Assembly (NCBI RefSeq): GCF_006345805.1
Contig: NC_043000.1
Coordinates: 155,000,001-155,064,000, forward strand
Direction of reading: 5' to 3'
DNA: 64,000 nt
Source: Octopus sinensis
Taxonomy: Eukaryota
Shown here: one piece after another, positions 11,764-63,407 of the stretch
Layout: each line of letters starts with the position of its first letter
Position numbering within the stretch: position 1 is the first letter of the stretch
The notes under the pieces: model-generated
What the model was told of the DNA's origin: nothing
Databases searched by the model: none
Seen by the model: only the letters and a program-made list of their open reading frames with translations
Made by a program: the position numbers and the translations under genes

Positions 11764-12598
11764 TTGATGACATACAATTGCTTCAAACTAAACAATCCAT
11801 TCGCCTATCAGATTCTGTACATTGTCTGTGCATATAACAATAGCCCAACATGTGTATGTAAACAACAAAATGAAACTATCGATCATGCTATCTCCATTTG
11901 CAGTTTTCTTGCGCCTACAGAGTATCTCAAAAGGCATGATAGAGCAGCACAATATATTCACCGGGTAATTTGCAAAAACCTGGACCTGCCTTATGTTAAA
12001 AACTGGTGGGAACACAAACTACCCCCAGTGCTTGAAAATGACCACATCTCACTCCTCTGGAACTTCACCGCTCAAACTGACAGAAAGATAGATGCGAATA
12101 GACCAGACACTATATTGAGAGACTTCAGGTAAAAATCATACCTCCTCATTGATATGACTGTCCAGTTGACATAAATGTATCTGTCGAGACCTACCAAAAA
12201 CTGAGCAAGTATAAAGAACTTGAAATAGAAATTGGCAAAATATGGAATCTCAAGACTAAAACAATACCTGTTGTCATAGGTGCCCTCGGAATGATAGCAA
12301 AAGGGGCTGATTCCTACCTAGCTCCAATACCAGAAAACCCCAAAATTACAGAAATTCAAAAGTTAGTGCTTATGGGAACTGCCCATATCGTACGTAAAAT
12401 ACTGTCTATGTAATCTCAAATTTAAAAAAAAACATGATTTTCTTATTTTTCTTAAACATTCTCTAGAACAATACTATGTGCAAAACCAAATATATAACAT
12501 CTTAGGCATAGCACTAACTTGAACTTCTAACTTGTCTCTTGAAGTCACTGGGTGAGACTTGTAGTCAACTTTACAAATACAAAGCAAAAGTCAAGCAC
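11764..12598 (+). mobile_element. R4/Dong-like non-LTR retrotransposon 3' fragment (RLE endonuclease), subfamily A
   Basis: Cys/His knuckle (CVCK..ETIDH..SIC), RHD, RPD..LIDM and KLSKYKELEIEI..W..KTIPVVIGALG motifs. Stop at 12411-12413, then 3' UTR and a (CAC/CAA/TAA)n tail. Confidence 0.85.
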
Positions 12599-32493: not shown

Positions 32494-33911
32494 ATGACAG
32501 ATCTATCGGACTTTCAAAGAAGTCAAATTGTTGGTACTCATAAGTAAGCCAGGCGCTAGCGCAAGAAAAACAACCGAAATGTTTGGTGTATCAAGAAGTA
32601 CTGTCTCGAAAGTAATGACAGCCTTTGAGAAAGAGGGAAAAACCTCCTGGTCGAAACAAATCTCAGGAAGAAAATCAAAACTTTCAGAGAGGGACTGTCG
32701 GACTCTTACGCAAATTGTTAGAAAGGATCACAAAAGTACAGCTCCTAAAATTACTGCACAGCTTAACGACCACCTCGAGAACCCACTTTCCACAAAATCT
32801 GTTCGACGGGAGCTGCACAAAGCCGGATTTCACGGGAAGGCTGCAATCAGAAAACTACTACTTTATAAAACAAACGTTGCAAAGCGTTTAGAGTGGAGTA
32901 AAAACCTACATAATTGGTCTCTAGAGCAGTGGAAGAATGTTATATTTTCGGACTAGTCACCCTTCACCTTATTTCCGAGTATACGTGTGGAGACAACCAA
33001 AAGAAGTATTTGAGCCAGACTGCCTTCTTCCAACTGTTAAACATGGAGGAGGAGGCGCAATGGCCCAGTGGTTAGGACAGCGGACTCGCGGTCGTAGAAT
33101 CGCGGTTTCGATTCCCAGACCGAGCGTTGTGAGTGTTTATTGAGCGAAAACACCTAAAGCTCCACGAGGCTCCGGCAGGGATGGTGGTGATCCCTGCTGT
33201 ACTCTTTCACCACAACTTTCTCTCACTCTTACTTCCTGTTTCTGTTGTACCTGTATTTCAAAGGGCCGGCCTTGTCACTCTCTGTGTCACGCTGAATATT
33301 CCCGAGAACTGCGTTAAGGGTACACGTGTCTGTGGAGTGCTCAGCCACTTACACGTTAATTTCACGAGTAGGCTGTTCCGTTGATTCGGATCAACCGGAA
33401 CCCTCGTCGTCGTAACCGACGGAGTGCTTCCCAAACATGGAGGAAGATCTGTGATGATCTAGTGGGGCTATATCTTGGAAATCCGCCGGCTCAGTGGTTT
33501 CCGTTCATGGCAATGTTATTAGTCAAAACTGTTTAAGCATTTTATCTGATCAAATTCATTTTATAGTTGCGCACTTTTCCGGAGGGAAACGCAATCTTTC
33601 AGGATGATAATGCACCGATTCACACAGCTAAATATGCTACTGAATGGCATGAGGAACATTCTAGTGAAGTTGAACATCTGATCTGGCCACCACGGTTCCC
33701 AGACCTCAGTATTATTGGACATTTATGGTGCATTTTAGAAAAACACGTAAGGAGTAGATATCCTCCACCATCATCACTACAAGATCCGGAAATTGTTTTA
33801 GCTGAAGAATGGACAAAAATTCCTTTGGAAACAATTCAAGCTTTGTACGAGTCCATACCTCGTAGAATTCAAGCTGTAATTACTGTCAAAGGCGGTCCTA
33901 TCCCATATTGA
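32494..33911 (+). pseudogene. Tc1 transposase pseudogene
   Basis: HTH region GVSRSTVSKV, WKNVIFSD, FQDDNAPIH, WPP..PDL.IIGHLW. Disrupted by a stop, frameshifts and a SINE insertion. Confidence 0.88.
33051..33432 (+). mobile_element. tRNA-SINE family 1, full length, 12-bp TSD
   Basis: AAACATGGAGGA duplicated at 33039-33050 and 33433-33444. A/B boxes present. Confidence 0.92.
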
Positions 33912-42680: not shown

Positions 42681-42722
42681 GTATATAGATAAGAAAGTTT
42701 GTTTAGTAAAGCACGTGGGTGA

Positions 42723-43394
42723 ATATATAAGAAAATAGTAAAGTGTGAAAAAACGACAGAAGGCTTAAATGTTAAAAAATATATATATTGTGTCAAAATG
42801 TCTGGAGAATATTGGAAAAATTTTTTCCTTTCCTTAAAATGACATAATTTTAAAATTTTTAAAGAAATTACCGGTTTCGCGTGTGTAGCTTTTCAAATTT
42901 CTTGTGACGTTATGTTTATATTGTATGGAATTATCATTGTTTTTATTTCCAGGAGATTCTAAATAAGGGGAGGTAGTGAGTGATTTTTTCCGGTGTAGGG
43001 GAGATAATCGCTTAAAAAATTTTTTTTCCCATTTCCTTGTTAATTTCTCTGTGTCAGTATGTCGGATGGTTGAGTCTGGGTTTGTACTTTTCAATGAAGA
43101 ATGTTTCCTTGTTCAGTCTCATTTGTGTTGATGATCCGAAAGCACATTGTAAAATGGGAAGATTAAAAATTGTGGCAGTAGTTGCTTTGCGCATTTCTCG
43201 ATGTGCTCACTAAAAGGTATCATTCTATATTCTGGGAATGCAATCTGTTGTCGATGCAGTGTGCATCTGCGCCTGAGTGATAGTCCCGTGGAACCCACGT
43301 AGTCTTGGTGGCAGCCCGAGCATTTAATAACATAAATTATGTTTTCAGAGGCACAAGTAAAGTTAGATTTGATCTTAAATTTCTGTCCCTCTTT
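42723..43394 (-). repeat. 672-bp inverted pseudo-LTR of the PLE
   Basis: Near-identical to 45165-45836. The differences I saw are small indels. Confidence 0.92.
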
Positions 43395-45520
43395 TGCAGA
43401 AAATTAAGACTAGCAGAAGCATCAAACAGTTTCAATACTGAAGATGAATCACTTGTCAAGAACAAAAGTGAACACATCCCACACAGAGGAAGAAATAAAG
43501 ATCTTGACGAATTCTGTAACCACATTGAGAACTTCCCCTACCATACTATATAAACAGAAAGCTAACCCAAATTTTAACAATACACAATGGAAAGAACTGA
43601 TAGAACTCCAAAATGATGAATATAACCATTAAGGAAGCGGACAAGGGAAATGCAGTTGTAATAATGGATACATCATACTACAGAAATCTTGTAATTTCCT
43701 TGCTTGATGAAGACCTACATTATGAAAAAATTACCAACTACACCCCACAAAAAAATGAAAACTCTATCTTCACTAATTAAAACCCATGAAAAGGAACTGA
43801 CAACCAAAGAGATTGATTTCCTAACAAACTTTAAATGCAAACCTAACCTTTTCTATGGTCTGCCAAAAATTCATAAAAGTCAAATTATAAATGAAACCAT
43901 TAAAAAATCACCAAAGACATACATACACACACCTAATCCGGGGGACCTAAAACTACGACCCATTGTAGCTGGCCCAACCTGTGAAACACCAGACTAAGTC
44001 TACTTATGGACATCCTCTTGAAACCCTTCCTTAAACATATCGATAGCCATATCAGAGATGACTTAGATATGTTAAACCACCTTCCAAAAAAAACCAAGGA
44101 AGAAACAATCCTGGGTTCATTTGATGTAGTCAACTTGTATACCAGTATACCTCATAATTATGGACTGGAGGCAATACAATTCTGGTTAGACCAATTTCCG
44201 GAAGAAATACCAAAAAGGATCAGTAAGGAATTCATTACTAAATCAATTGAATCATCCTACACAATAACCACTTCATGTTTGACAATACATTTTACCGTCA
44301 AAAATCCGGAATTGCTATGGGTACAAGGGCAGCACCAGTCATTGCGAACTTAACAATGGGATACATGGAAATAATCATTTACAGGAATCTCTATCAATCT
44401 TTGGAAACTCCCTCTCTCAATACATAAAAGAGAATTGGAAACGATTCCTAGACGATTGTTTCATTCTCTGAATGAAAACATAGATAAACTCCTAAAATTT
44501 AAAAACCTATTGAACAGCATAAACCCAAATATACAGTTCACAATGGAATACAACCAAAAGGAGCTCCCGTTCTTGGATATACTAATAAAAAAATTAACCT
44601 TAAAATAGAAACAGACATTTTTTACAAAGCCACAGACGCAAACAATACCTTCTTTTTATTCATGCCACCCAAGACACACTAAAACAAACATCCCCTTCAA
44701 CCTTGCCAAGAAGGATATGCGCACAATAGTGTCAGAACAAAATACCAGGAACTTTAGACTGCAAGAACTCAAAAAACCCCTAATTGACAGACATTACCCA
44801 GCTCAACTCATAGAGGATGGGATCAGACGTGCAACAGAAATCAACATAGAAACTTTAAGAAAAGTTCAACACAACAACACACCTTCCCCGAAAATACTAC
44901 CTTACATATCTACAATACAACCCCAGAAACAAGAAGCCTTCACCATCATCACCCAGAATTTACCAATACTTCATAAAAACCCAAAATTAAAGAAAATTCT
45001 AAACATACACCAAATCATTAAAAGCTACAAACAGCCTAAATCACTTAAAAAGATTCTCACAAAGGCAAAATTGTCTTCTAAATTACGGATGCAAAAGTTA
45101 AAAAATGTGGTAGATCGAACTGTGCAACATGTCCTAACCTATTGAAGGATCAGAATTCTTCTTTAAAGAGGGACAGAAATTTAAGATCAAATCTAACTTA
45201 CTTGTGCCTCTGAAAACATAATTTATGTTATTAAATGCTCGGGCTGCCACCAAGACTACGTGGGTTCCACGGGACTATCACTCAGGCGCAGATGCACACT
45301 GCATCGACAACAGATTGCATTCCCAGAATATAGAATGATACCTTTTAGTGAGCACATCGAGAAATGCGCAAAGCAACTACTGCCACAATTTTTAATCTTC
45401 CCATTTTACCAATGTGCTTTCGGATCATCAACACAAATGAGACTGAACAAGGAAACATTCTTCATTGAAAAGTACAAACCCAGACTCAACCATCCGAACA
45501 TACTGACACAGAGAAATTAA
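43395..45520 (+). pseudogene. PLE reverse transcriptase/GIY-YIG ORF, 5'-truncated and frameshifted
   Basis: Motifs KEADKGNAVV, FYGLPKIHK, LRPIVAG, SFDVVNLYTSIP, GIAMGT, RFLDDCF, PFLDI. Cys-rich linker CGRSNCATC, then NIIYVIKCSGC..YVGST. Confidence 0.9.
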
Positions 45521-45829
45521 CAAGGAAATGGGAAAAAAAATTTTTTAAGCGATTATCTCCCCTACACCGGAAAAAAATCACTCACTACCTCCCCTTATTT
45601 AGAAATCTCTGGAAATAAAAACAATGATAATTCCATACAATATAAACATAACGTCACAAGAAATTTGAAAAGCTACACGCGAAACCGGTAATTTCTTTAA
45701 AAATTTTAAAATTATGTCATTTTAAGGAAAGGAAAAAAATTTTTCCAATATTCTCCAGACATTTTGACACAAATATATATTTTTTAACATTTAAGCCTTC
45801 TGTCGTTTTTTCACACTTTACTATTTTCT

Positions 45830-45885
<56 letters not shown>

Positions 45886-55402: not shown

Positions 55403-55960
55403 TACATGCCTCCTCTTCGATATGACTGTCCCAATCGACATAAATGTATCTATCAAGACCTACCAAAAACTGAGCAAGTATAAAGATCTTGAAATAGAAA
55501 TTCGCAAAATGTGGAACCTCATGACTAAAATAGTACCTGTTGCCATAGGTGTCCTAGGAATGATAGCAAAAGGGCTGATTGCTACTTATCTCAGATACCA
55601 GGAAGTCCAAAAATGGAAGAAATTAAAAAAATAGTGCTCATAGGAACTGTTCATATCCTTCGAAAAATATTGTCTATGGAATCACCAAAGCATTTTAATC
55701 TGTAAGCATTGTGAAAGGTACTTTTAAATGTACATAATAGCAAACATCTTTTAGTGTCACACTATCATCATAAAATTACTTTTAAAACAAACTTATCATT
55801 TTCTCATGTTTTGACAGGCATTCTCTAGAAAAATACTCTGCGCAGAAGCAAAAATATGGCACTCTAGTCATAACACCAACTTGAACTTCTGACTTGTCTC
55901 TTGAGGTCTCTGGGTGAGTCTTGGAGTCAACTTGTACAAATACCAAGCAAAAGCCAAGCA
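55403..55960 (+). mobile_element. R4/Dong-like LINE 3' fragment, subfamily A
   Basis: DMTVPIDINVSIKTYQKLSKYKDLEIEIRKMW. 3' UTR shared with 11764-12598. AAT tail. Confidence 0.85.
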
Positions 55961-56652
55961 TATAATAATAATAGTAATAGTTTTCACCCTATCGGAATAG
56001 GTAATTTAGGAAAAACACGGTCTTATACTTCATTATATATAATATATATATATATTAATATATATACATATACATAAGGCACTGTCATGCCTTTGGGTTC
56101 AAAAAGTGAAAGTAGAGAAATCTGACGTCAGACGTCAACTTCGTGTATTTACGTCGTCTTTCGTTTATTTACGGGCCGTTTATTTACGTACCACTGAAAT
56201 GCAAGTAAAAGCTTGTATGTATGTATGTATATTATATATACATACATACACACATATATAATATACATGTATATATACATATATATATATATTTAATACA
56301 TACATATATATAATATATACATGTATTTTTAATCGGTCTTTTTCTTAACCACTACATTATATACATACATACAGATAGATATATATACGACACACACACA
56401 TATAATAGATATAAAATGTGTACGTGTGTACATTTTTCAGAAAAAAATTCATACATTTTAAATATCAATAGCATTTCTCTTATTTTTTACATGAAGTTTT
56501 CGAAAAATGAATTAGAATGTAAAAATCAAATATATCAATTAATAAACGCAAATTATTTTCAAATATCATTTTCAACGGTGAGATTATCAAAATATAAACT
56601 TGAAGTTAAGTTTAAAATAAATGCGATACTCATTCTGTCTTGATACTTATGC

Positions 56653-57557
56653 TCAAATACATGGATATAGCTGTCGAATTTGTTCTATCAACTTCCCGAA
56701 TATATCATCCTTAAATTCATAGCGCCACATGAATTCGATGAGATGGGTCTGAAGTAAATTTCTGGCTGTTCCACATTCTCTCCTATTTCGAGTCTTTACG
56801 TTTTTCATAAACATTCTATGTGGTTGGTTGTGGCAAATGTTACCGGATCAACAAAATTTATAGAATGATTCACGGTCAAATGTCTGTATCCTAGCTGACT
56901 GAGTGTATTATACGAACGCCAAAGGTCGGATATTATTGTTGTACCAGGCAATATACGCTCGCGTATAATCTGTATATAGTGTCCGCTGTTCGATCTTCAA
57001 CTGCCACTAAAACACATCTTCTACTATCTCTTTCTAATGCACCAAAAACACCATTGTTGCGTTTTAACCCGATGGCCACATGATATTTTCTCTTAACAAA
57101 CGCAGTTTCATCTATTTCACAACGATTCTATTGGGTCCTCCAGTTTAATATTCTGTGGCAACATAATATTCTGCACATACATCGCGGCAAAAATTCCTCC
57201 AATCGTTACCGCTACATTTGCTAAATGACATTCCTGTCCTATTCCTTTTGCTAAATCTTCTTTGGCCCAGTAAAAAAATATCTATGATCTGTGACACTTC
57301 AATTTGCTATTTTCTAAAAATGTTCCTTTTCTAATTGACACGGATTTTCTACAAGGTCTTCCACACGACCATATTATTTCATCAGATATATTTTTTTTCG
57401 TTACTTCTCTCATGGGAGCTCCACACGATGTACATATTTTCTGGGTATTCAAAAGGCCATGTCTCTTAAGCCAATTAATGCTATCTGCTGTTGTAGCAGT
57501 GGAGACGGCAATATCGCGGTGACTAATTCCTCTTAAACTTGGATATGCAAAAGCCAT
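56653..57557 (-). pseudogene. Merlin transposase, left-arm copy (apparent frameshifts)
   Basis: Reverse complement of the right-arm ORF. ATG at 57557, TGA at 56653. Several 1-3-nt indels. Confidence 0.88.
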
Positions 57558-57958
57558 ATTAAAATTGTTTAGCACGTGTTGATATCACACTGAAAGTTTC
57601 TAACTGAATAAATTTCAAAGTTTGAATTACGCACGCACGTGGTGGTCAGTGGTCATTCTGATTGGTGTATGTAATCGCGGTGATGGTCATGGGGGTTCAT
57701 TTGTGCAGATTTTGGTGTGATTTCTTTTAAAAACAATAATGAATAATGCAAGAATAAATATATTCTTGCATTATTCATTATTGTTTTTAAAAAAGAATCA
57801 CACCAAAATCTGCACAAATGAACCCCCATGACCATCACCGCGATTACATACATACAATCAGAATGACCACTGACCACCACGTGCGTAATTCAAACTTTGA
57901 AATTTATTCAGTTAGAAACTTTCAGTGTGATATCAACACGTGCTAAACAATTTTAAAT

Positions 57959-58862
57959 ATGGCTTTTGCATATCCAAGTTTAAGAGGAATTAGTCACCGC
58001 GATATTGCCGTCTCCACTGCTACAACAGCAGATAGCATTAATTGGCTTAAGAGACATGGCCTTTTGAATACCCAGAAAATATGTACATCGTGTGGAGCTC
58101 CCATGAGAGAAGTAACGAAAAAAATATATCTGATGAAATAATATGGTCGTGTGGAAGACCTTGTAGAAAATCCGTGTCAATTAGAAAAGGAACATTTTTA
58201 GAAAATAGCAAATTGAAGTGTCAACAGATCATAGATATTTTGTTTTACTGGGCCAAAGAAGATTTAGCAAAAGAATAGGACAGGAATGTCATTTAGCAAA
58301 TGTAGCGGTAACCGATTGGAGGAATTTTTGCCGCGATGTATGTGCAGAATATTATGTTGCACAGAATATTAAACTGGGAGGACCCAATAGAATCGTTGAA
58401 ATAGATGAAACTGCGTTTGTTAAGAGAAAATATCATGTTGGCCATCGGGTTAAAACGCAATGGGTGTTTGGTGCATTAGAAAGAGATAGTAGAAGATGTA
58501 TTTTAGTGGCAGTTGAAGATCGAACAGCGGACACTCTATTACAGATTATACGCGAGCGTATATTGCCTGGTACAACAATAATATCCGACCTTTGGCGTTC
58601 GTATAATACACTCAGTCAGCTAGGATACAGACATTTGACCGTGAATCATTCTATAAATTTTGTTGATCCGGTAACATTTGCCACAACCAACCACATAGAA
58701 TGTTTATGGAAACACGTAAAGACTCGAAATAGGAGAGAATGTGGAACAGCCAGAAATTTACTTCAGACCCATCTCATCGAATTCATGTGGCGCTATGAAT
58801 TTAAGGATGATATATTCGGGAAGTTGATAGAACAAATTCGACAGCTATATCCATGTATTTGA
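57959..58862 (+). CDS. Merlin/ISXO2-family DDE transposase, right-arm copy (two single-base gaps; 301-aa consensus)
   Basis: N-terminal zinc ribbon CTSC..WSCGRPC. Catalytic motifs VEIDET, IISDLWRSY, TNHIECLW and terminal EFMWR. The left arm supplies the two missing bases. Confidence 0.88.
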
Positions 58863-61159
58863 GCATAAGTATCAAGACAGAATGAGTATCGCATTTATTT
58901 TTAAACTTAACTTCAAGTTTATATTTTGATAATCTCACCGTTGAAAATGATATTTGAAAATAATTTGCGTTTATTAATTTGATATATTTGATTTTTACAT
59001 TCTAAATTCATTTTTCGAAAACTTCATGTAAAAAATAAGAGAAATGCTATTGATATTTAAAATGTATGAATTTTTTTCTGAAAAATGTACACACGTACAC
59101 ATTTTATATCTATTATATGTGTGTGTGTGTATCTATCTATCTATCTGTATGTATGTATATAATGTATAGTGGTTAAGAAAAAGACCGATTAAAAATACAT
59201 GTATATATTATATATATGTATGTATTAAATATATATATATATGTATATATACATGTATATTATATATATGTGTGTATGTATGTATATATATATAATACTA
59301 CATACATACAAGCTTTTACTTGCATTTCAGTGGTACGTAAATAAACGGCGTAAATAAACGAAAGACGACGTAAATACACGAAGTTGACGTCTGACGTCAG
59401 ATTTCTCTACTTTCACTTTTGACACCCAAAGGCATGACAGTGCCATACATAATTTTATAAAGTATGTATTGCACACGTATCATCTGCTACATATTTTGTG
59501 GTTCTAAACTTTACCCATTAGCTAAAATACATTTTGATTGCAGACCAGTAGATATTTAACCGGTGATTTTGTGTCAAACATATATACAAACACAAGGCTT
59601 ATCTAGCACCAGCCGACAGCACTGAATAATGGCGTCTTATACGTGGTAACGGCTCGGGGTTTACAGGGAATGTCTTTTTAAGCAGGAAAGCAATAGTGGT
59701 TCAAGTTCGTTGGTTACAATCCTCGATAGACTGAAGACCTGGCAATATAAATTCTGCGGATTATTTTCAATGAGAAATATTTGAGGGAGAAAATTCTCAC
59801 CTGCAAAATGTCTGGTAGCTTTTAATCTGACAGTCAACCTTACAGAAATAGCAGTCAAATATCAGTCAAATCACATACCAGCGCATTAAATAGAGAATGC
59901 ACAAAACAATGAAATGCTCACTTTAGGACACCTTAAATCATAGAGCTGTCTTGTCAGAGATGAACTCGTGTTAATCAACAGCAACAAGTGGATTTATTAC
60001 TTGCCAATCAAGCAACTGCTACGTGCTTCTTGTCTTGCACGAAACAGCATTTAAATGTGTCAGAAAACGTATTTATCCTGGTAAAAATAATTGGAAATGT
60101 CATAGATTTATTAGTTCCAGATGTTTCTAAAGTGCAAGAGGAAAACGGCAAGAAAGACGTTTACATGAAAAGTACTGACCCTGAGTTATATAAAAACAAC
60201 CAGATTTATTTATCTAAATTCAATTGTAATTTATCGTATGCTATCACTAATCAATAATGCCTTTGCATTTTAGCATTATATATTTGAATCATTGTTGGAA
60301 TAATTTTATTATATAGGAGTACCATAGGTGTGTTCGATCGATTAAGCAGCAGAAAATGGGAAAGCTGTATGAGAGGTAACTTTAAAATGTTGATTGATAG
60401 CACAATTGCAAATATACAAGAGTAGCGACTGTTGTTTTGCTTCTCTGAAGAAAAAAGTCTTTTAATATCAATATAAGAAGCGTGTGTAGACAATACGTTA
60501 TTCGAGCAATAGACTACATTATTTGTTTAGTATCTGACAATGTTATGTACAATCTGTTTGATAAATTATGTAAACATTGCTCATGAGGATATCCTCTTCC
60601 GTCGATGAATAGTCGATATAAATCATCAGAATTGTGGAATGAACGTTACTGAGAGGCAGCAGTTAGACTAAGAATTACTAGCATACAGCTATCGAGTCAT
60701 TTGGTGTTACAGTTTCCATTAACACAATTTAACTCGCTGATTTATTATAATCATAAATATATTTCTCCCTAGGAAACATGTAGCTGTAACACTGAAAATA
60801 ACCAGATTCATATTTATCATAAGTAGATGTATAATAACGTCATTTTAATTAAGTAACCTATATTAGTAAAAGCAGGGCTCGTGCTTCGTAAAATCGGTTA
60901 TCAACAATATACGGTGGAAATAAGATTAAAAACAATTGAAGATGACAGACAACTGTAGTGTCAATAAGATGCAACACAGTAGCAGCTGCAACAGAGACAG
61001 CAACATAATAGTACTTGTGACAACATTGAAAAATTAATAACTGTGGTAGAATTATTTTAGAAAGAAAACAACATTAGTATAGTACTAGTAACCGCTATGG
61101 CAAGGGCAACACATTAACAGTAACATCAACAGTTGGTGTAATTCTTTCCCTCTTACTGT

Positions 61160-61411
61160 GTATGCCTGTCTGTTTATCTGTCTGTCTGTTTCACGTACGT
61201 ACGTATATATGTATGTATGTATTAATGTATGTATGTATGTATGCATGTATTAATGTATGTATATGTGTGTGTGTGTGTGTGTCTGTATGTGTGTATGTAT
61301 GTATGTATGTATGTGTGTATGTATGTATGTATGTATGTATATATGTATGTATGTATATACGTATGTATGTATGTATGTATGTATGTATGTATGTATATAT
61401 GTATGTATGTC

Positions 61412-61443
<32 letters not shown>

Positions 61444-61467
61444 TGTATGTATATATGTATGTATGTC

Positions 61468-61499
<32 letters not shown>

Positions 61500-61583
61500 T
61501 GTATGTATGTATATATGTATGTATGTATATACGTATGTATGTATGTATGTATGTATGTATGTATGTATATATGTATGTATGTC

Positions 61584-61615
<32 letters not shown>

Positions 61616-61814
61616 TGTATGAATGTATGAATGTATGTGTGTATGTGTGTATGTATGTATGTATGTATGTATGTATGTATGTATGTATTGTGTATGTGTA
61701 TGTGTGTGTATGTGTATATGTTTGTATGTATGTATGTATTAATGTATGTATGTATGTATATATTATGTATGTATGTATTATGTATGTATGTATTAATGTA
61801 TATGTATGTATGTC

Positions 61815-61846
<32 letters not shown>

Positions 61847-62160
61847 TGTATGAATGTATGAATGTATGTGTGGATGTATGGTGTGTATGTATGTATGTAT
61901 GTATGTATGTATTATGTATGTATTGTGTATGTGTATGTGTGTGTATGTGTATATGTTTGTGTATTATGTATGTATTAATGTATGTAGTAGTATATATTAT
62001 GTATGTATTTATTATGTATGTATGTATTAATGTATGTATGTAATGTATGTATGTATGTATGTATGTACGTATGTATGTATGTATGTATGTATGTATCATG
62101 TATGTATGTGTGTGTGTGCGTATGTGTGTGTGTATGTGTGTATGTGTGTAGGGACGTAGG
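61160..62160. repeat. ~1-kb compound (ATGT)n microsatellite
   Basis: Degenerate ATGT/GT/AT array. Confidence 0.95.
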
Positions 62161-62394
62161 TAGATATTCATTCAGCTTTAATGAATATATTGTTTTGCTT
62201 AATTATATTTCACCAGCGTGACACCAACAACCACACACGGACACGCACATATGTGTACGTACGTATGTACAATTATGTACAGACACATATATGTATACAC
62301 ACACACACATATACATATATATATACGCATTATACGTTTATGTATGTATATGTGTGTTTGTATGTGTGTGTGTATGTGTGTGTGTATATATATC

Positions 62395-62428
<34 letters not shown>

Positions 62429-62559
62429 TATATATACAAACACATATCTATACAACACATAATATATATACACACATATATATATACACACATGTGTACA
62501 CACACGCACGCACGCACACACATAGGGGTAGGAAGAGTTGTAAGAGGCACGGTGGTCGT

Positions 62560-62940
62560 GTTTTCGGCAACAACAGCAACAACAAACAACAAAAAGGAAA
62601 ACAATGGTAACAGTAACAGCTGCGGCAACAAGACAGTGGCAGGGGTAGCAGAACTGAAACAAAGTAGTAGTAGTAGTAGTAGTAGTAGCGGTGGTAGTAG
62701 TAGTAGTAGTAATGGTAGTGGTGGTGGCAGAGTGTTGGTAGTGGTGATTGCTGTAGAGGTGGCGGTAGTGATTGTTGTGACGATGAGTGGTGGTGCTGGT
62801 GATGATGGTGATGATGATGGTGGTGGTAGTTGTGGTGGTTGTGGTGAGAGCAGCAGCTGTAGCAGTAGCGGTAAAAATTATCTGCAGCAGCAGCAACATC
62901 AACAGCAGCAGCAGCAGCAACAGTGGCAGCAGTAATGGCC
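62560..62940. repeat. Mosaic of trinucleotide repeats (AAC, TAG, TGG, TGA, CAG)
   Basis: Directly visible low-complexity runs. Confidence 0.85.
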
Positions 62941-63407
62941 GCTAAAGCCATCAATCGATAAATCATAGCGAACGAACCGAGAAACGAAAGAACGAACGAA
63001 CGAACGAACGAACGAACAATGAAAGCGAACAAAAGGAGTTGCTAGAGAGACTAGTACACGAGTGACGAGAGTATACTGGGTACAATTAAATCAGGGTATA
63101 CTGAATCAGTTAAATTGCATAGACTCTGCGCAGCGAATTGTCACCTCGATAGATATTACAGGAGAGGTCTTGGTCATAAGACAGGTTGTTCCATCGAAAG
63201 ACAGACAGACTGACTGACCAAGAAGGCTGTTAGTGAGTCTGTTGGATTGCATGACGTCAATGACACACTGGCACATATCAGTACACTGTTTTCTCGACAG
63301 CTATTTACACTATTTCACACTTATCAAACCGACAACAGTCATTCGAATTGACGACATGCTCAACAGCGATTCACTGATTTACTGAAACCTACCTACACAC
63401 ACACACA

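What the first reader, a model, noticed from the sequence alone, without database searches (positions are those of the whole stretch)
56070..59452. A transposon that is one 3.4-kb palindrome: double-armed Merlin element with two transposase genes and a true 8-bp TSD
Seen: 56078-57756 pairs with 57761-59444 around a 4-nt loop (AATA). Each arm carries the whole DDE transposase gene, pointing outward. Both ends are GGCACTGTCATGCC, the direct repeat ATACATAA flanks it, and the sequence beyond is unrelated on the two sides. Established: Merlin/IS1016-type elements have GG termini, 8-9-bp TSDs and this DDE motif spacing; the usual layout is one ORF between TIRs. Inference: the unit excised and inserted as a hairpin dimer built from two copies of the same (3') end. 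That would make it a foldback element whose TIRs contain the transposase itself. I do not know of a description of this architecture.
Basis: partly seen in the sequence, partly recalled or inferred. Interest (0 to 1): 0.92.

Follow-up and report, generated by a model that had tools for sequence, protein, structure and literature searches.

The report
Palindromic two-gene Merlin transposon copy
An octopus Merlin-type jumping gene sits here as a 3.4-kb mirror-image double copy, most likely a very recent one-off product of fold-back DNA repair rather than proof of a new kind of transposon that moves as a hairpin dimer.

Summary
Arms 56078-57756 and 57761-59444 pair around the loop AATA. Both termini are GGCACTGTCATGCC, an 8-bp direct repeat ATACATAA flanks the unit, and the outer flanks are unrelated. 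Each arm carries an outward-pointing IS1595/Merlin DDE transposase gene.

Three corrections:
- Neither gene is intact as assembled. The arms differ by 7 mismatches and 30 indel events. An unrelated inverted repeat in the same window shows 0 mismatches and 9 indels, so this is assembly noise. Merging the arms gives an intact 301-aa protein.
- The termini are not "3' ends". They match the 5' (left) end of canonical Octopus sinensis copies, and the canonical 3' terminus is absent.
- The two relatives with definable ends are ordinary single-ORF elements with their own 8-bp TSDs.

The centre is fully templated by canonical sequence: a natural 4-bp inverted repeat with a 4-nt loop, 232 bp inside the canonical 5' end. 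That is the signature of snap-back-primed repair synthesis.

Re-annealing in the long terminal repeat would keep the original TSD, so the TSD does not show that the palindrome itself transposed. An assembly artefact is unlikely but not excluded. Moderate interest: a new variant of a known kind.

The parts
56070..56077 (.). Left copy of the 8-bp target-site duplication, ATACATAA
   Evidence: Chance identity of two window 8-mers is 2e-4.
56078..56215 (+). Left terminal repeat ('L'). It starts GGCACTGTCATGCC and is homologous to the canonical 5' end (L004 element positions 1-111 and 128-147).
   Evidence: 84% identity to the L004 left end; for L001.
56216..56527 (-). Left copy of segment 'm'. It is microsatellite-rich and has no counterpart in canonical O. 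sinensis copies.
   Evidence: m 58990-59330 matches 56527-56194 at 96.5%; no canonical homology.
56528..57756 (-). Left arm body, equal to canonical positions 1496 to 233 in reverse complement. It contains the left transposase gene 57557-56653 (- strand), which has about 10 frameshifting indels as assembled.
   Evidence: 87.6% to L004.
57757..57760 (+). Central 4-nt loop, AATA. On the + strand it reads as in the canonical sequence. It is flanked by the natural 4-bp inverted repeat AATA (57753-57756) / TATT (57761-57764).
57761..58989 (+). Right arm body, equal to canonical positions 233-1496. It contains the right transposase gene 57959-58862 (+), which has 2 frameshifts as assembled (a poly-A run near 58117 and a missing G near 58272).
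   Evidence: 89% to L004.
58990..59308 (+). Right copy of segment 'm'
59309..59444 (-). Right terminal repeat, an inverted copy of 'L' ending ...GGCATGACAGTGCC
   Evidence: 87% to the L004 LEFT end over 114 bp, against 80% to the right end over only the outer 56 bp.
59445..59452 (.). Right copy of the 8-bp target-site duplication, ATACATAA

Best explanation
This is a real, very young structural derivative of an autonomous Merlin (eukaryotic IS1595/IS1016-like DDE) transposon in an octopus genome.

Inferred sequence of events:
1. An ordinary one-gene progenitor with long (~138-bp) left-type terminal repeats at both ends inserted here and made the ATACATAA duplication.
2. Later, during repair of a break or of an excision gap, a nascent strand copying the element leftwards stopped 232 bp short of the canonical 5' end.
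3. That strand folded back on a natural 4-bp inverted repeat (AATA..TATT, 4-nt loop) and primed synthesis on itself. It copied the gene, the 3' region and the terminal repeat in inverted orientation.
4. The newly made terminal repeat annealed to the surviving left terminal repeat. That sealed the break and preserved the flank and the TSD.

The result is a head-to-head palindrome with two divergent transposase genes.

The many frameshifts are assembly indel errors. The true arms are probably more than 99.5% identical and both genes are probably intact.

Shown: the structure, the family, the canonical layout in relatives, the templated centre, and the indel noise. Inferred: the order of events, and that the palindrome formed at this locus.
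For: Structure and TSD.

Family: PF12762 at 1.6e-18 and NF033547 at 86 bits. The protein merged from the two arms is 301 aa, and is 90% identical without gaps to the intact 301-aa O. sinensis XP_036354748.1.

Canonical single-ORF copies with their own 8-bp TSDs: L004, 1620 bp, AAATTCAC; L001, AAACAAAG.

Centre: homology of each arm to the canonical sequence starts at position 233 and runs 4 nt past the loop into the other arm. There are no untemplated bases, and the loop has the canonical orientation on the + strand.

Indel noise: a second, unrelated inverted repeat (42722-43394 vs 45165-45836) has 0 mismatches and 9 indels. With an O. sinensis copy as outgroup, about 13 of the resolvable changes are private to the left arm and about 3 to the right. 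None is shared.

Mechanistic precedent: fold-back priming at breaks (PMC10622511), snap-back synthesis in gap repair (PMC2943611), and recruitment of internal sequence into longer TIRs in Galileo (PMC3573991).
Against: - No progenitor-type copy (single ORF, segment 'm', left-type repeat at both ends) was found. The only relatives available, from O. sinensis and O. bimaculoides, have a different right end.
- No raw reads, no other individuals and no empty or ordinary-filled allele could be examined.
- Nothing in the sequence separates formation at this locus from formation elsewhere followed by transposition.
- A near-perfect 1.7-kb-arm palindrome with a 4-nt spacer is expected to be unstable in vivo, which makes an artefact worth excluding.
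Confidence: 0.45

Rival explanations
1. The palindrome formed elsewhere, by the same fold-back chemistry, and then excised and integrated here as one unit using its two identical left-type ends. That integration made the ATACATAA duplication. It would be a mobile foldback-Merlin whose TIRs contain the transposase gene.
For: A perfect 8-bp TSD directly abuts two identical GG termini, with unrelated flanks. Both ends are the same (left) type, so the pair is a plausible substrate. The underlying ORF is intact, so the family looks recently active.
Against: It needs one more event than formation at this locus, and the TSD is equally explained by the progenitor's insertion. There is no second palindromic copy: none in the window, and none of the four related octopus loci is palindromic (L001 and L004 are complete single-ORF copies; L002 is 5'-truncated and L003 rearranged). 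The centre-spanning ORF is absent from the 15-billion-protein collection. Whether two left ends suffice for Merlin transposase is unknown.
Confidence: 0.25
2. Assembly or library artefact. The true locus holds an ordinary single-gene element, and a fold-back (snap-back) chimeric long read was built into the consensus.
For: The assembly is visibly noisy, with indel-only differences between repeat copies. The left arm carries about four times more private errors than the right, as if it were less well supported. Fold-back artefacts make up about 0.55-0.6% of ONT genomic reads (PMC12338684). Perfect long palindromes are rare in vivo.
Against: A fold-back read is symmetric through its flanks. Here the left arm ends exactly at the element terminus and continues into a different flank that carries the matching TSD. 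Joining a true read to a fold-back read would have to happen within only ~138 bp of shared terminal repeat. The asymmetric 4-nt loop excludes a simple unsplit template/complement read, which would give a perfectly symmetric centre. The second inverted repeat shows that the indel noise is general, not special to this locus.
Confidence: 0.15
3. Two separate insertions: one copy nested in or next to another in inverted orientation, as in double-Ds or a composite IS pair.
For: There are two inverted gene copies, and such arrangements are known for Ac/Ds and for Tn5/Tn10.
Against: The centre lies at canonical position 233 in both arms. There are no inner termini, no inner TSD and no asymmetry, and the symmetry is exact to the base.
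Confidence: 0.02

Closest known systems
Canonical Merlin elements (Feschotte 2004; PMC8101967), here represented by the Octopus sinensis copies L004 (VCDQ01006077.1) and L001 (VCDQ01004827.1)
   Same: DDE_Tnp_IS1595 transposase of 301 aa, termini starting GG, an 8-bp TSD, and 89-91% nucleotide identity over canonical positions 233-1496.
   Different: Canonical copies are about 1.6 kb, with one ORF and imperfect 56-66-bp TIRs whose left and right ends differ further in. The window copy is 3.4 kb and has two inverted genes. It lacks canonical positions ~148-232 apart from the short block repeated in each arm's 3' UTR, and it lacks the canonical right end. It carries an extra ~320-bp segment and has a left-type end on both sides.
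Mu killer (maize MuDR derivative; PMC3440606) and Ac killer 1 (PMC13635294)
   Same: A natural inverted duplication of a transposase gene, with two copies of the same terminal repeat. It is a rearranged derivative of an autonomous DNA transposon.
   Different: Mu killer duplicates only part of mudrA and acts through a read-through hairpin RNA. Here the whole gene and its upstream region are duplicated head-to-head with a 4-nt spacer and the genes diverge. No RNA or silencing data exist for this copy.
Galileo (P superfamily) copies with extended TIRs, and Foldback-like elements (PMC3573991, PMC4168063)
   Same: Internal, originally single-copy sequence is recruited in inverted orientation, so the TIRs grow inward.
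   Different: Galileo extensions cover spacer regions, and no intact transposase lies inside the TIR. Classic FB TIRs are built of tandem subrepeats. Here the TIR is the whole half-element including the ORF.
Composite bacterial transposons (Tn5, Tn10; own knowledge)
   Same: Two inverted copies of a transposase-bearing unit are mobilised through their outer ends.
   Different: Each IS in a composite keeps both of its own ends and cargo lies between them. Here the inner ends are missing and there is no cargo.
Fold-back inverted duplications formed at double-strand breaks (PMC10622511, PMC3907307, PMC2943611)
   Same: A short natural inverted repeat (4 bp here) primes self-templated synthesis and leaves a small asymmetric spacer at the centre.
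   Different: Those events are usually chromosomal, large, and resolved through dicentric chromosomes. Here the event is confined to one transposon and closed by homology in its terminal repeat.

Membership tests
Merlin superfamily (eukaryotic IS1595/IS1016-like DNA transposons) | Transposase with a DDE_Tnp_IS1595 domain | tested here: met
   PF12762 at 1.6e-18, 67.6 bits against a cut-off of 27. NF033547 IS1595-family at 86.4 bits against a cut-off of 75. The query was the 301-aa protein merged from the two arms.
Merlin superfamily (eukaryotic IS1595/IS1016-like DNA transposons) | Conserved D..D..E catalytic triad | tested here: met
   D150 (VEIDE), D211 (IISDLW) and E248 (NHIECLW). D211 is invariant and D150 and E248 are at least 90% conserved in a 20-sequence alignment. 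The 60-residue D-D spacing lies within the 50-70 aa reported between the first two conserved blocks around the triad (PMC8101967).
Merlin superfamily (eukaryotic IS1595/IS1016-like DNA transposons) | TIRs with a conserved terminal 5'-GG | tested here: met
   GGCACTGTCATGCC at both ends. The same holds in L004, and similarly in L001.
Merlin superfamily (eukaryotic IS1595/IS1016-like DNA transposons) | 8- or 9-bp target-site duplication | tested here: met
   ATACATAA on both sides, with chance 2e-4. L004 has AAATTCAC and L001 has AAACAAAG.
Merlin superfamily (eukaryotic IS1595/IS1016-like DNA transposons) | Usual layout: a single transposase ORF between short-to-moderate TIRs (24-462 bp) | tested here: not met
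   The window copy has two inverted genes and effective TIRs of about 1.68 kb. Relatives L001 and L004 do have the usual layout. The layout is typical of the family rather than defining.
Foldback (FB) elements in the strict sense | Very long TIRs made of tandem subrepeats, with little or no coding sequence in the TIR | tested here: not met
   The arms are a unique-sequence gene plus UTRs. The only repeats are ordinary microsatellites in segment 'm'.
Composite (Tn5/Tn10-type) transposon | Two complete inverted IS copies, each with both of its ends, flanking a central segment | tested here: not met
   There are no inner termini. Both arms break at canonical position 233 and are joined by a 4-nt loop.
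Inverted-duplication derivative of an autonomous DNA transposon (Mu killer type) | Two copies of the same terminal repeat plus an inverted duplication of transposase sequence | tested here: met
   Both ends are left-type and the full gene is duplicated in inverted orientation.
Inverted-duplication derivative of an autonomous DNA transposon (Mu killer type) | Produces hairpin RNA or small RNAs that silence the family | not testable with these tools
   No transcript or small-RNA data are available.
Long-read fold-back artefact | Mirror symmetry continues through the flanks, and the centre is either symmetric or holds adapter sequence | tested here: not met
   The flanks are unrelated and carry a TSD. 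The centre is an asymmetric loop that is fully canonical in sequence. Raw reads were not available, so an artefact is not formally excluded.

The most novel reading that the evidence does not exclude
The palindrome is itself a mobile, autonomous unit: a Merlin 'foldback' whose ~1.7-kb TIRs each contain a complete, probably intact transposase gene. It would move on two identical left-type ends, and other copies with their own 8-bp TSDs would exist in this octopus genome.

That would show three things. A DDE cut-and-paste transposase can mobilise a perfect hairpin-forming dimer. Two identical ends suffice. Such a family persists despite palindrome instability and its potential to form dsRNA, which would be a substrate for ADAR or small-RNA pathways in cephalopods.
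Probability: 0.2. Interest if true: 0.6.

Novelty: new variant of a known kind. Interest (0 to 1): 0.32.

Why it matters
If real, this copy preserves a usually invisible step: how DNA-transposon families acquire long or foldback TIRs and inverted-duplication derivatives. The junction is still intact and can be read base by base.

Such head-to-head copies are also the kind of structure that triggered heritable silencing of Mutator and Ac in maize. In a cephalopod, any read-through transcript would fold into a 1.7-kb dsRNA, so the copy could matter for small-RNA or RNA-editing responses to the family.

There is a practical point as well. Indel-only differences between repeat copies flag consensus noise in this assembly, so apparent pseudogenes in its repeats should not be trusted.

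On present evidence this is a single rearranged copy, not a new class of element.

Tried and rejected
1. Other copies in the window: none. Only microsatellite hits appeared.

2. Independent support from exact ORFs that span the centre, both junctions and the flanks: none of the 9 is in the 15-billion-protein collection. This says little, because random ORFs are seldom called as genes.

3. Exact 31-nt centre-adjacent pattern in the metagenome and prokaryote genome collections: 0 hits, as expected.

4. More octopus copies through cluster members: one extra locus, L004 via P0121. The other O. bimaculoides proteins have no contig on record.

5. Survey of 80 Merlin-like metagenome loci for inverted repeats covering the gene: 0 of 80. 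I give this little weight. Half the contigs are under 3 kb, and short-read graph assemblers collapse perfect palindromes.

6. Orthologous empty site through a host gene: the window has no recognisable host exon. It holds only Tc1/mariner remnants, retroelement-like ORFs and microsatellites. Flank A is itself a repeat.

7. Nested or double insertion: rejected, because the centre has no termini.

8. Unsplit duplex read: rejected, because the loop is asymmetric.

9. Real mutational decay of the genes: rejected. The differences are 30 indel events against 7 mismatches, none is shared between the arms, and the merged ORF is intact.
Full report
**1. The observation**

- Arms 56078-57756 and 57761-59444 are reverse complements around the loop AATA at 57757-57760.
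- A global alignment of the arms gives 1654 matches, 7 mismatches and 43 gap positions in 30 gap events.
- Both termini read GGCACTGTCATGCC.
- ATACATAA occurs immediately outside each terminus, at 56070-56077 and 59445-59452.
- Two random 8-mers of this AT-rich window are identical with probability 2e-4. At this exact spacing only 10 of 60,617 positions match, this one included.
- The outer flanks are unrelated. Flank A is part of a dispersed repeat also present at 12201-12597, and flank B is unique in the window.

**2. The genes**

Each arm carries an outward-pointing gene: right 57959-58862 on the + strand, left 57557-56653 on the - strand. Neither is open as assembled. The right copy has two frameshifts and the left about ten.

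The frameshifts are never shared between the arms. Taking at each difference the arm that keeps the frame yields a 301-aa protein, and that protein has these properties:
- It hits PF12762 (DDE_Tnp_IS1595) at 1.6e-18 and NCBIfam IS1595-family transposase at 86 bits, above both curated cut-offs.
- It is 90% identical, without a single gap, to an intact 301-aa Octopus sinensis protein, XP_036354748.1.
- The catalytic residues are D150, D211 and E248.

The best database relatives are all from Octopus sinensis and O. bimaculoides, so the window comes from an octopus.

**3. The arm differences are assembly noise**

- Thirty indel events against seven mismatches is not how sequences diverge.
- With an O. 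sinensis copy as outgroup, about 13 of the resolvable changes are private to the left arm and about 3 to the right. Nearly all are 1-4-bp indels or a mismatch next to a deletion.
- A second, unrelated inverted repeat in the same window (about 42722-43394 against 45165-45836) differs by 0 mismatches and 9 indels over 677 columns.
- The assembly therefore carries indel-only consensus errors of roughly 0.7-0.9% per base in repeated sequence.
- The true arms are probably more than 99.5% identical and both genes are probably intact. The duplication is very young.

**4. What an ordinary family member looks like**

Four related octopus loci could be fetched.
- L004 (O. sinensis VCDQ01006077.1, 7557-9176) is a complete 1620-bp element. 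It has termini GGCACTGTCATGCC / GACATGACAGTGCC, the 8-bp TSD AAATTCAC, TIRs of only about 56 bp at 82% identity, and one intact ORF.
- L001 is a second canonical copy with the TSD AAACAAAG and a nested MITE.
- L002 is 5'-truncated and L003 is old and rearranged.
- None of the four is palindromic.

Merlin elements are defined by the IS1595-type DDE domain, TIRs of 24-462 bp starting GG, and 8-9-bp TSDs (PMC8101967). The window element meets all of these except the usual single-ORF layout.

**5. Anatomy of an arm against the canonical element**

- Canonical positions 233-1496 are present in each arm at 88-89% identity.
- Canonical positions ~148-232 are missing from the centre, apart from a short block (172-199) that also occurs as an inverted repeat in each arm's 3' UTR. 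Positions 1-147 reappear at the outer termini (see below).
- Canonical positions 1497-1620, the right terminus, are absent altogether.
- In their place each arm has about 320 bp of microsatellite-rich sequence with no canonical counterpart (58990-59308 and its mirror).
- Beyond that lies a terminal 114-138 bp that matches the canonical LEFT end at 84-87%. The match runs well beyond the 56-66 bp that the canonical left and right ends share.

So both termini are left-type. The immediate progenitor was therefore probably a one-gene element that already had a left-type repeat at both ends. I could not find such a copy, because no search of the source genome is available.

**6. The centre**

Three canonical copies share ...CTGTTTAAACTTTATAAATAAATATATTCTTGCATTATTC.... 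This stretch contains a natural 4-bp inverted repeat, AATA..TATT, with a 4-nt spacer.

In the window the canonical homology of the right arm runs leftwards through the loop and 4 nt into the left arm, to 57753. The left arm does the mirror image. On the + strand the loop has the canonical orientation.

The sequence GCAAG-AATA-AATA-TATT-CTTGC is exactly what results from this sequence of steps:
- a strand being synthesised leftwards stops at canonical position 233;
- it folds back so that its last four bases pair with the nearby complement;
- it is then extended on itself.

No untemplated base is needed. This is the classical fold-back or snap-back priming signature (PMC10622511, PMC3907307, PMC2943611). 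Any palindrome with a small loop can be described in this way. The informative points are that the loop and stem are entirely canonical sequence and that the loop is asymmetric.

**7. How the left flank and TSD are kept**

After self-templated synthesis has copied the gene, the 3' region and the right terminal repeat, the new 3' end is complementary to the left terminal repeat still attached to flank A. Annealing there closes the break, as in synthesis-dependent strand annealing.

The product is flank A - TSD - L - m - gene(reversed) - loop - gene - m' - L' - TSD - flank B, which is what is observed.

The TSD therefore does not show that the palindrome transposed. It may simply be the progenitor's. 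Formation elsewhere followed by transposition needs the same chemistry plus one more step. It stays possible because the ends form a matched pair and the family looks active.

My estimates are:

| Explanation | Probability |
|---|---|
| Formed at this locus | about 0.45 |
| Formed elsewhere, then moved here as a unit | about 0.25 |
| Assembly or library artefact | about 0.15 |
| Two separate insertions (nested or adjacent) | about 0.02 |
| Remainder, unassigned | about 0.13 |

**8. The artefact hypothesis**

Fold-back chimeric reads are real, at about 0.55-0.6% of ONT genomic reads (PMC12338684), and this assembly is noisy.

Three points argue against an artefact:
- Such reads are symmetric through their flanks. 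Here the left arm stops exactly at the element terminus and continues into a different flank with the matching TSD.
- Splicing a true read to a fold-back read would have to occur within about 138 bp of shared repeat.
- The asymmetric loop also rules out an unsplit template/complement read.

A snap-back made in vitro during library preparation cannot be told from one made in vivo by sequence alone. Spanning raw reads remain the decisive test.

**9. Comparison with known systems**

- The element is a member of the Merlin superfamily.
- Its architecture is closest to naturally occurring inverted-duplication derivatives of autonomous transposons. Mu killer has two copies of TIRA plus an inverted partial mudrA (PMC3440606), and Ac killer 1 is similar.
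- It also resembles Galileo copies whose TIRs grew by recruiting internal sequence in inverted orientation (PMC3573991).
- It resembles a Tn5/Tn10-type composite without cargo, but it lacks inner ends.
- It is not a Foldback element in the strict sense.
- I found no description of a Merlin copy, or of any natural cut-and-paste element, in which the whole transposase gene lies inside each TIR. With a single copy in hand this is a new variant of a known kind of rearrangement, not a new class.

**10. Limits**

- No eukaryotic genome search was available. Relatives came only through annotated proteins, giving four loci.
- The survey of 80 Merlin-like metagenome loci found no inverted repeat over the gene. 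It is weak evidence because short-read assemblers collapse palindromes.
- Exact-ORF and exact-pattern look-ups found nothing.

Noticed in passing
window 42722-45836: A second element bounded by ~670-bp inverted repeats (42722-43394 and 45165-45836). The repeats differ by 0 mismatches and 9 small indels. They enclose about 1.8 kb with retroelement-like ORFs (44006-44353, 44717-45145) that have no Pfam hit. It may be a DIRS- or Penelope-like element. I used it as the baseline for assembly indel noise.
   Followed up: partly
window 32528-33911: A Tc1/mariner remnant. One ORF has HTH_Tnp_Tc3_2 (1.2e-13) and another has DDE_3 (9e-8), in separate frames.
   Followed up: partly
window 55470-55960 and 12201-12597: The left flank of the Merlin copy belongs to a dispersed repeat with a second copy in the window at 81-84% identity. 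The repeat ends about 110 bp before the insertion site.
   Followed up: no
L001 6778-7250; L003 7190-7605: A ~470-bp MITE with 44-bp perfect TIRs is nested inside the transposase gene of the O. sinensis Merlin copy L001. A related MITE lies just downstream of the Merlin copy in L003.
   Followed up: no
L003 5620-5850; L001 5784-5800; L004 7775-7797: The palindrome centre falls in the motif TTTATAAATAAATATATT. L003 repeats this motif about four times in its 5' subterminal region, and it is conserved in all three canonical copies. It could be a subterminal binding repeat or a preferred pause or break site.
   Followed up: no
L001 5736-5781 vs 7436-7391; L004 7710-7755 vs 8991-8947: Canonical copies have a second, internal inverted repeat of about 46 bp (81-89% identical). 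One copy lies between the left end and the 5' UTR, the other just after the stop codon.
   Followed up: no
merged transposase residues 42-68 (window 58082-58162 region): A conserved N-terminal cysteine motif, CxxC...C(x3)C. C42 and C65 are invariant and C45 is at least 90% conserved across 20 Merlin-like proteins. [quoted passage not shown]
   Followed up: no
window 61160-63030: Nearly 2 kb of (TGTA/TATG/TG)n-type microsatellite arrays and low-complexity sequence produce long spurious ORFs on both strands. Similar microsatellites make up much of segment 'm' inside the Merlin arms.
   Followed up: no
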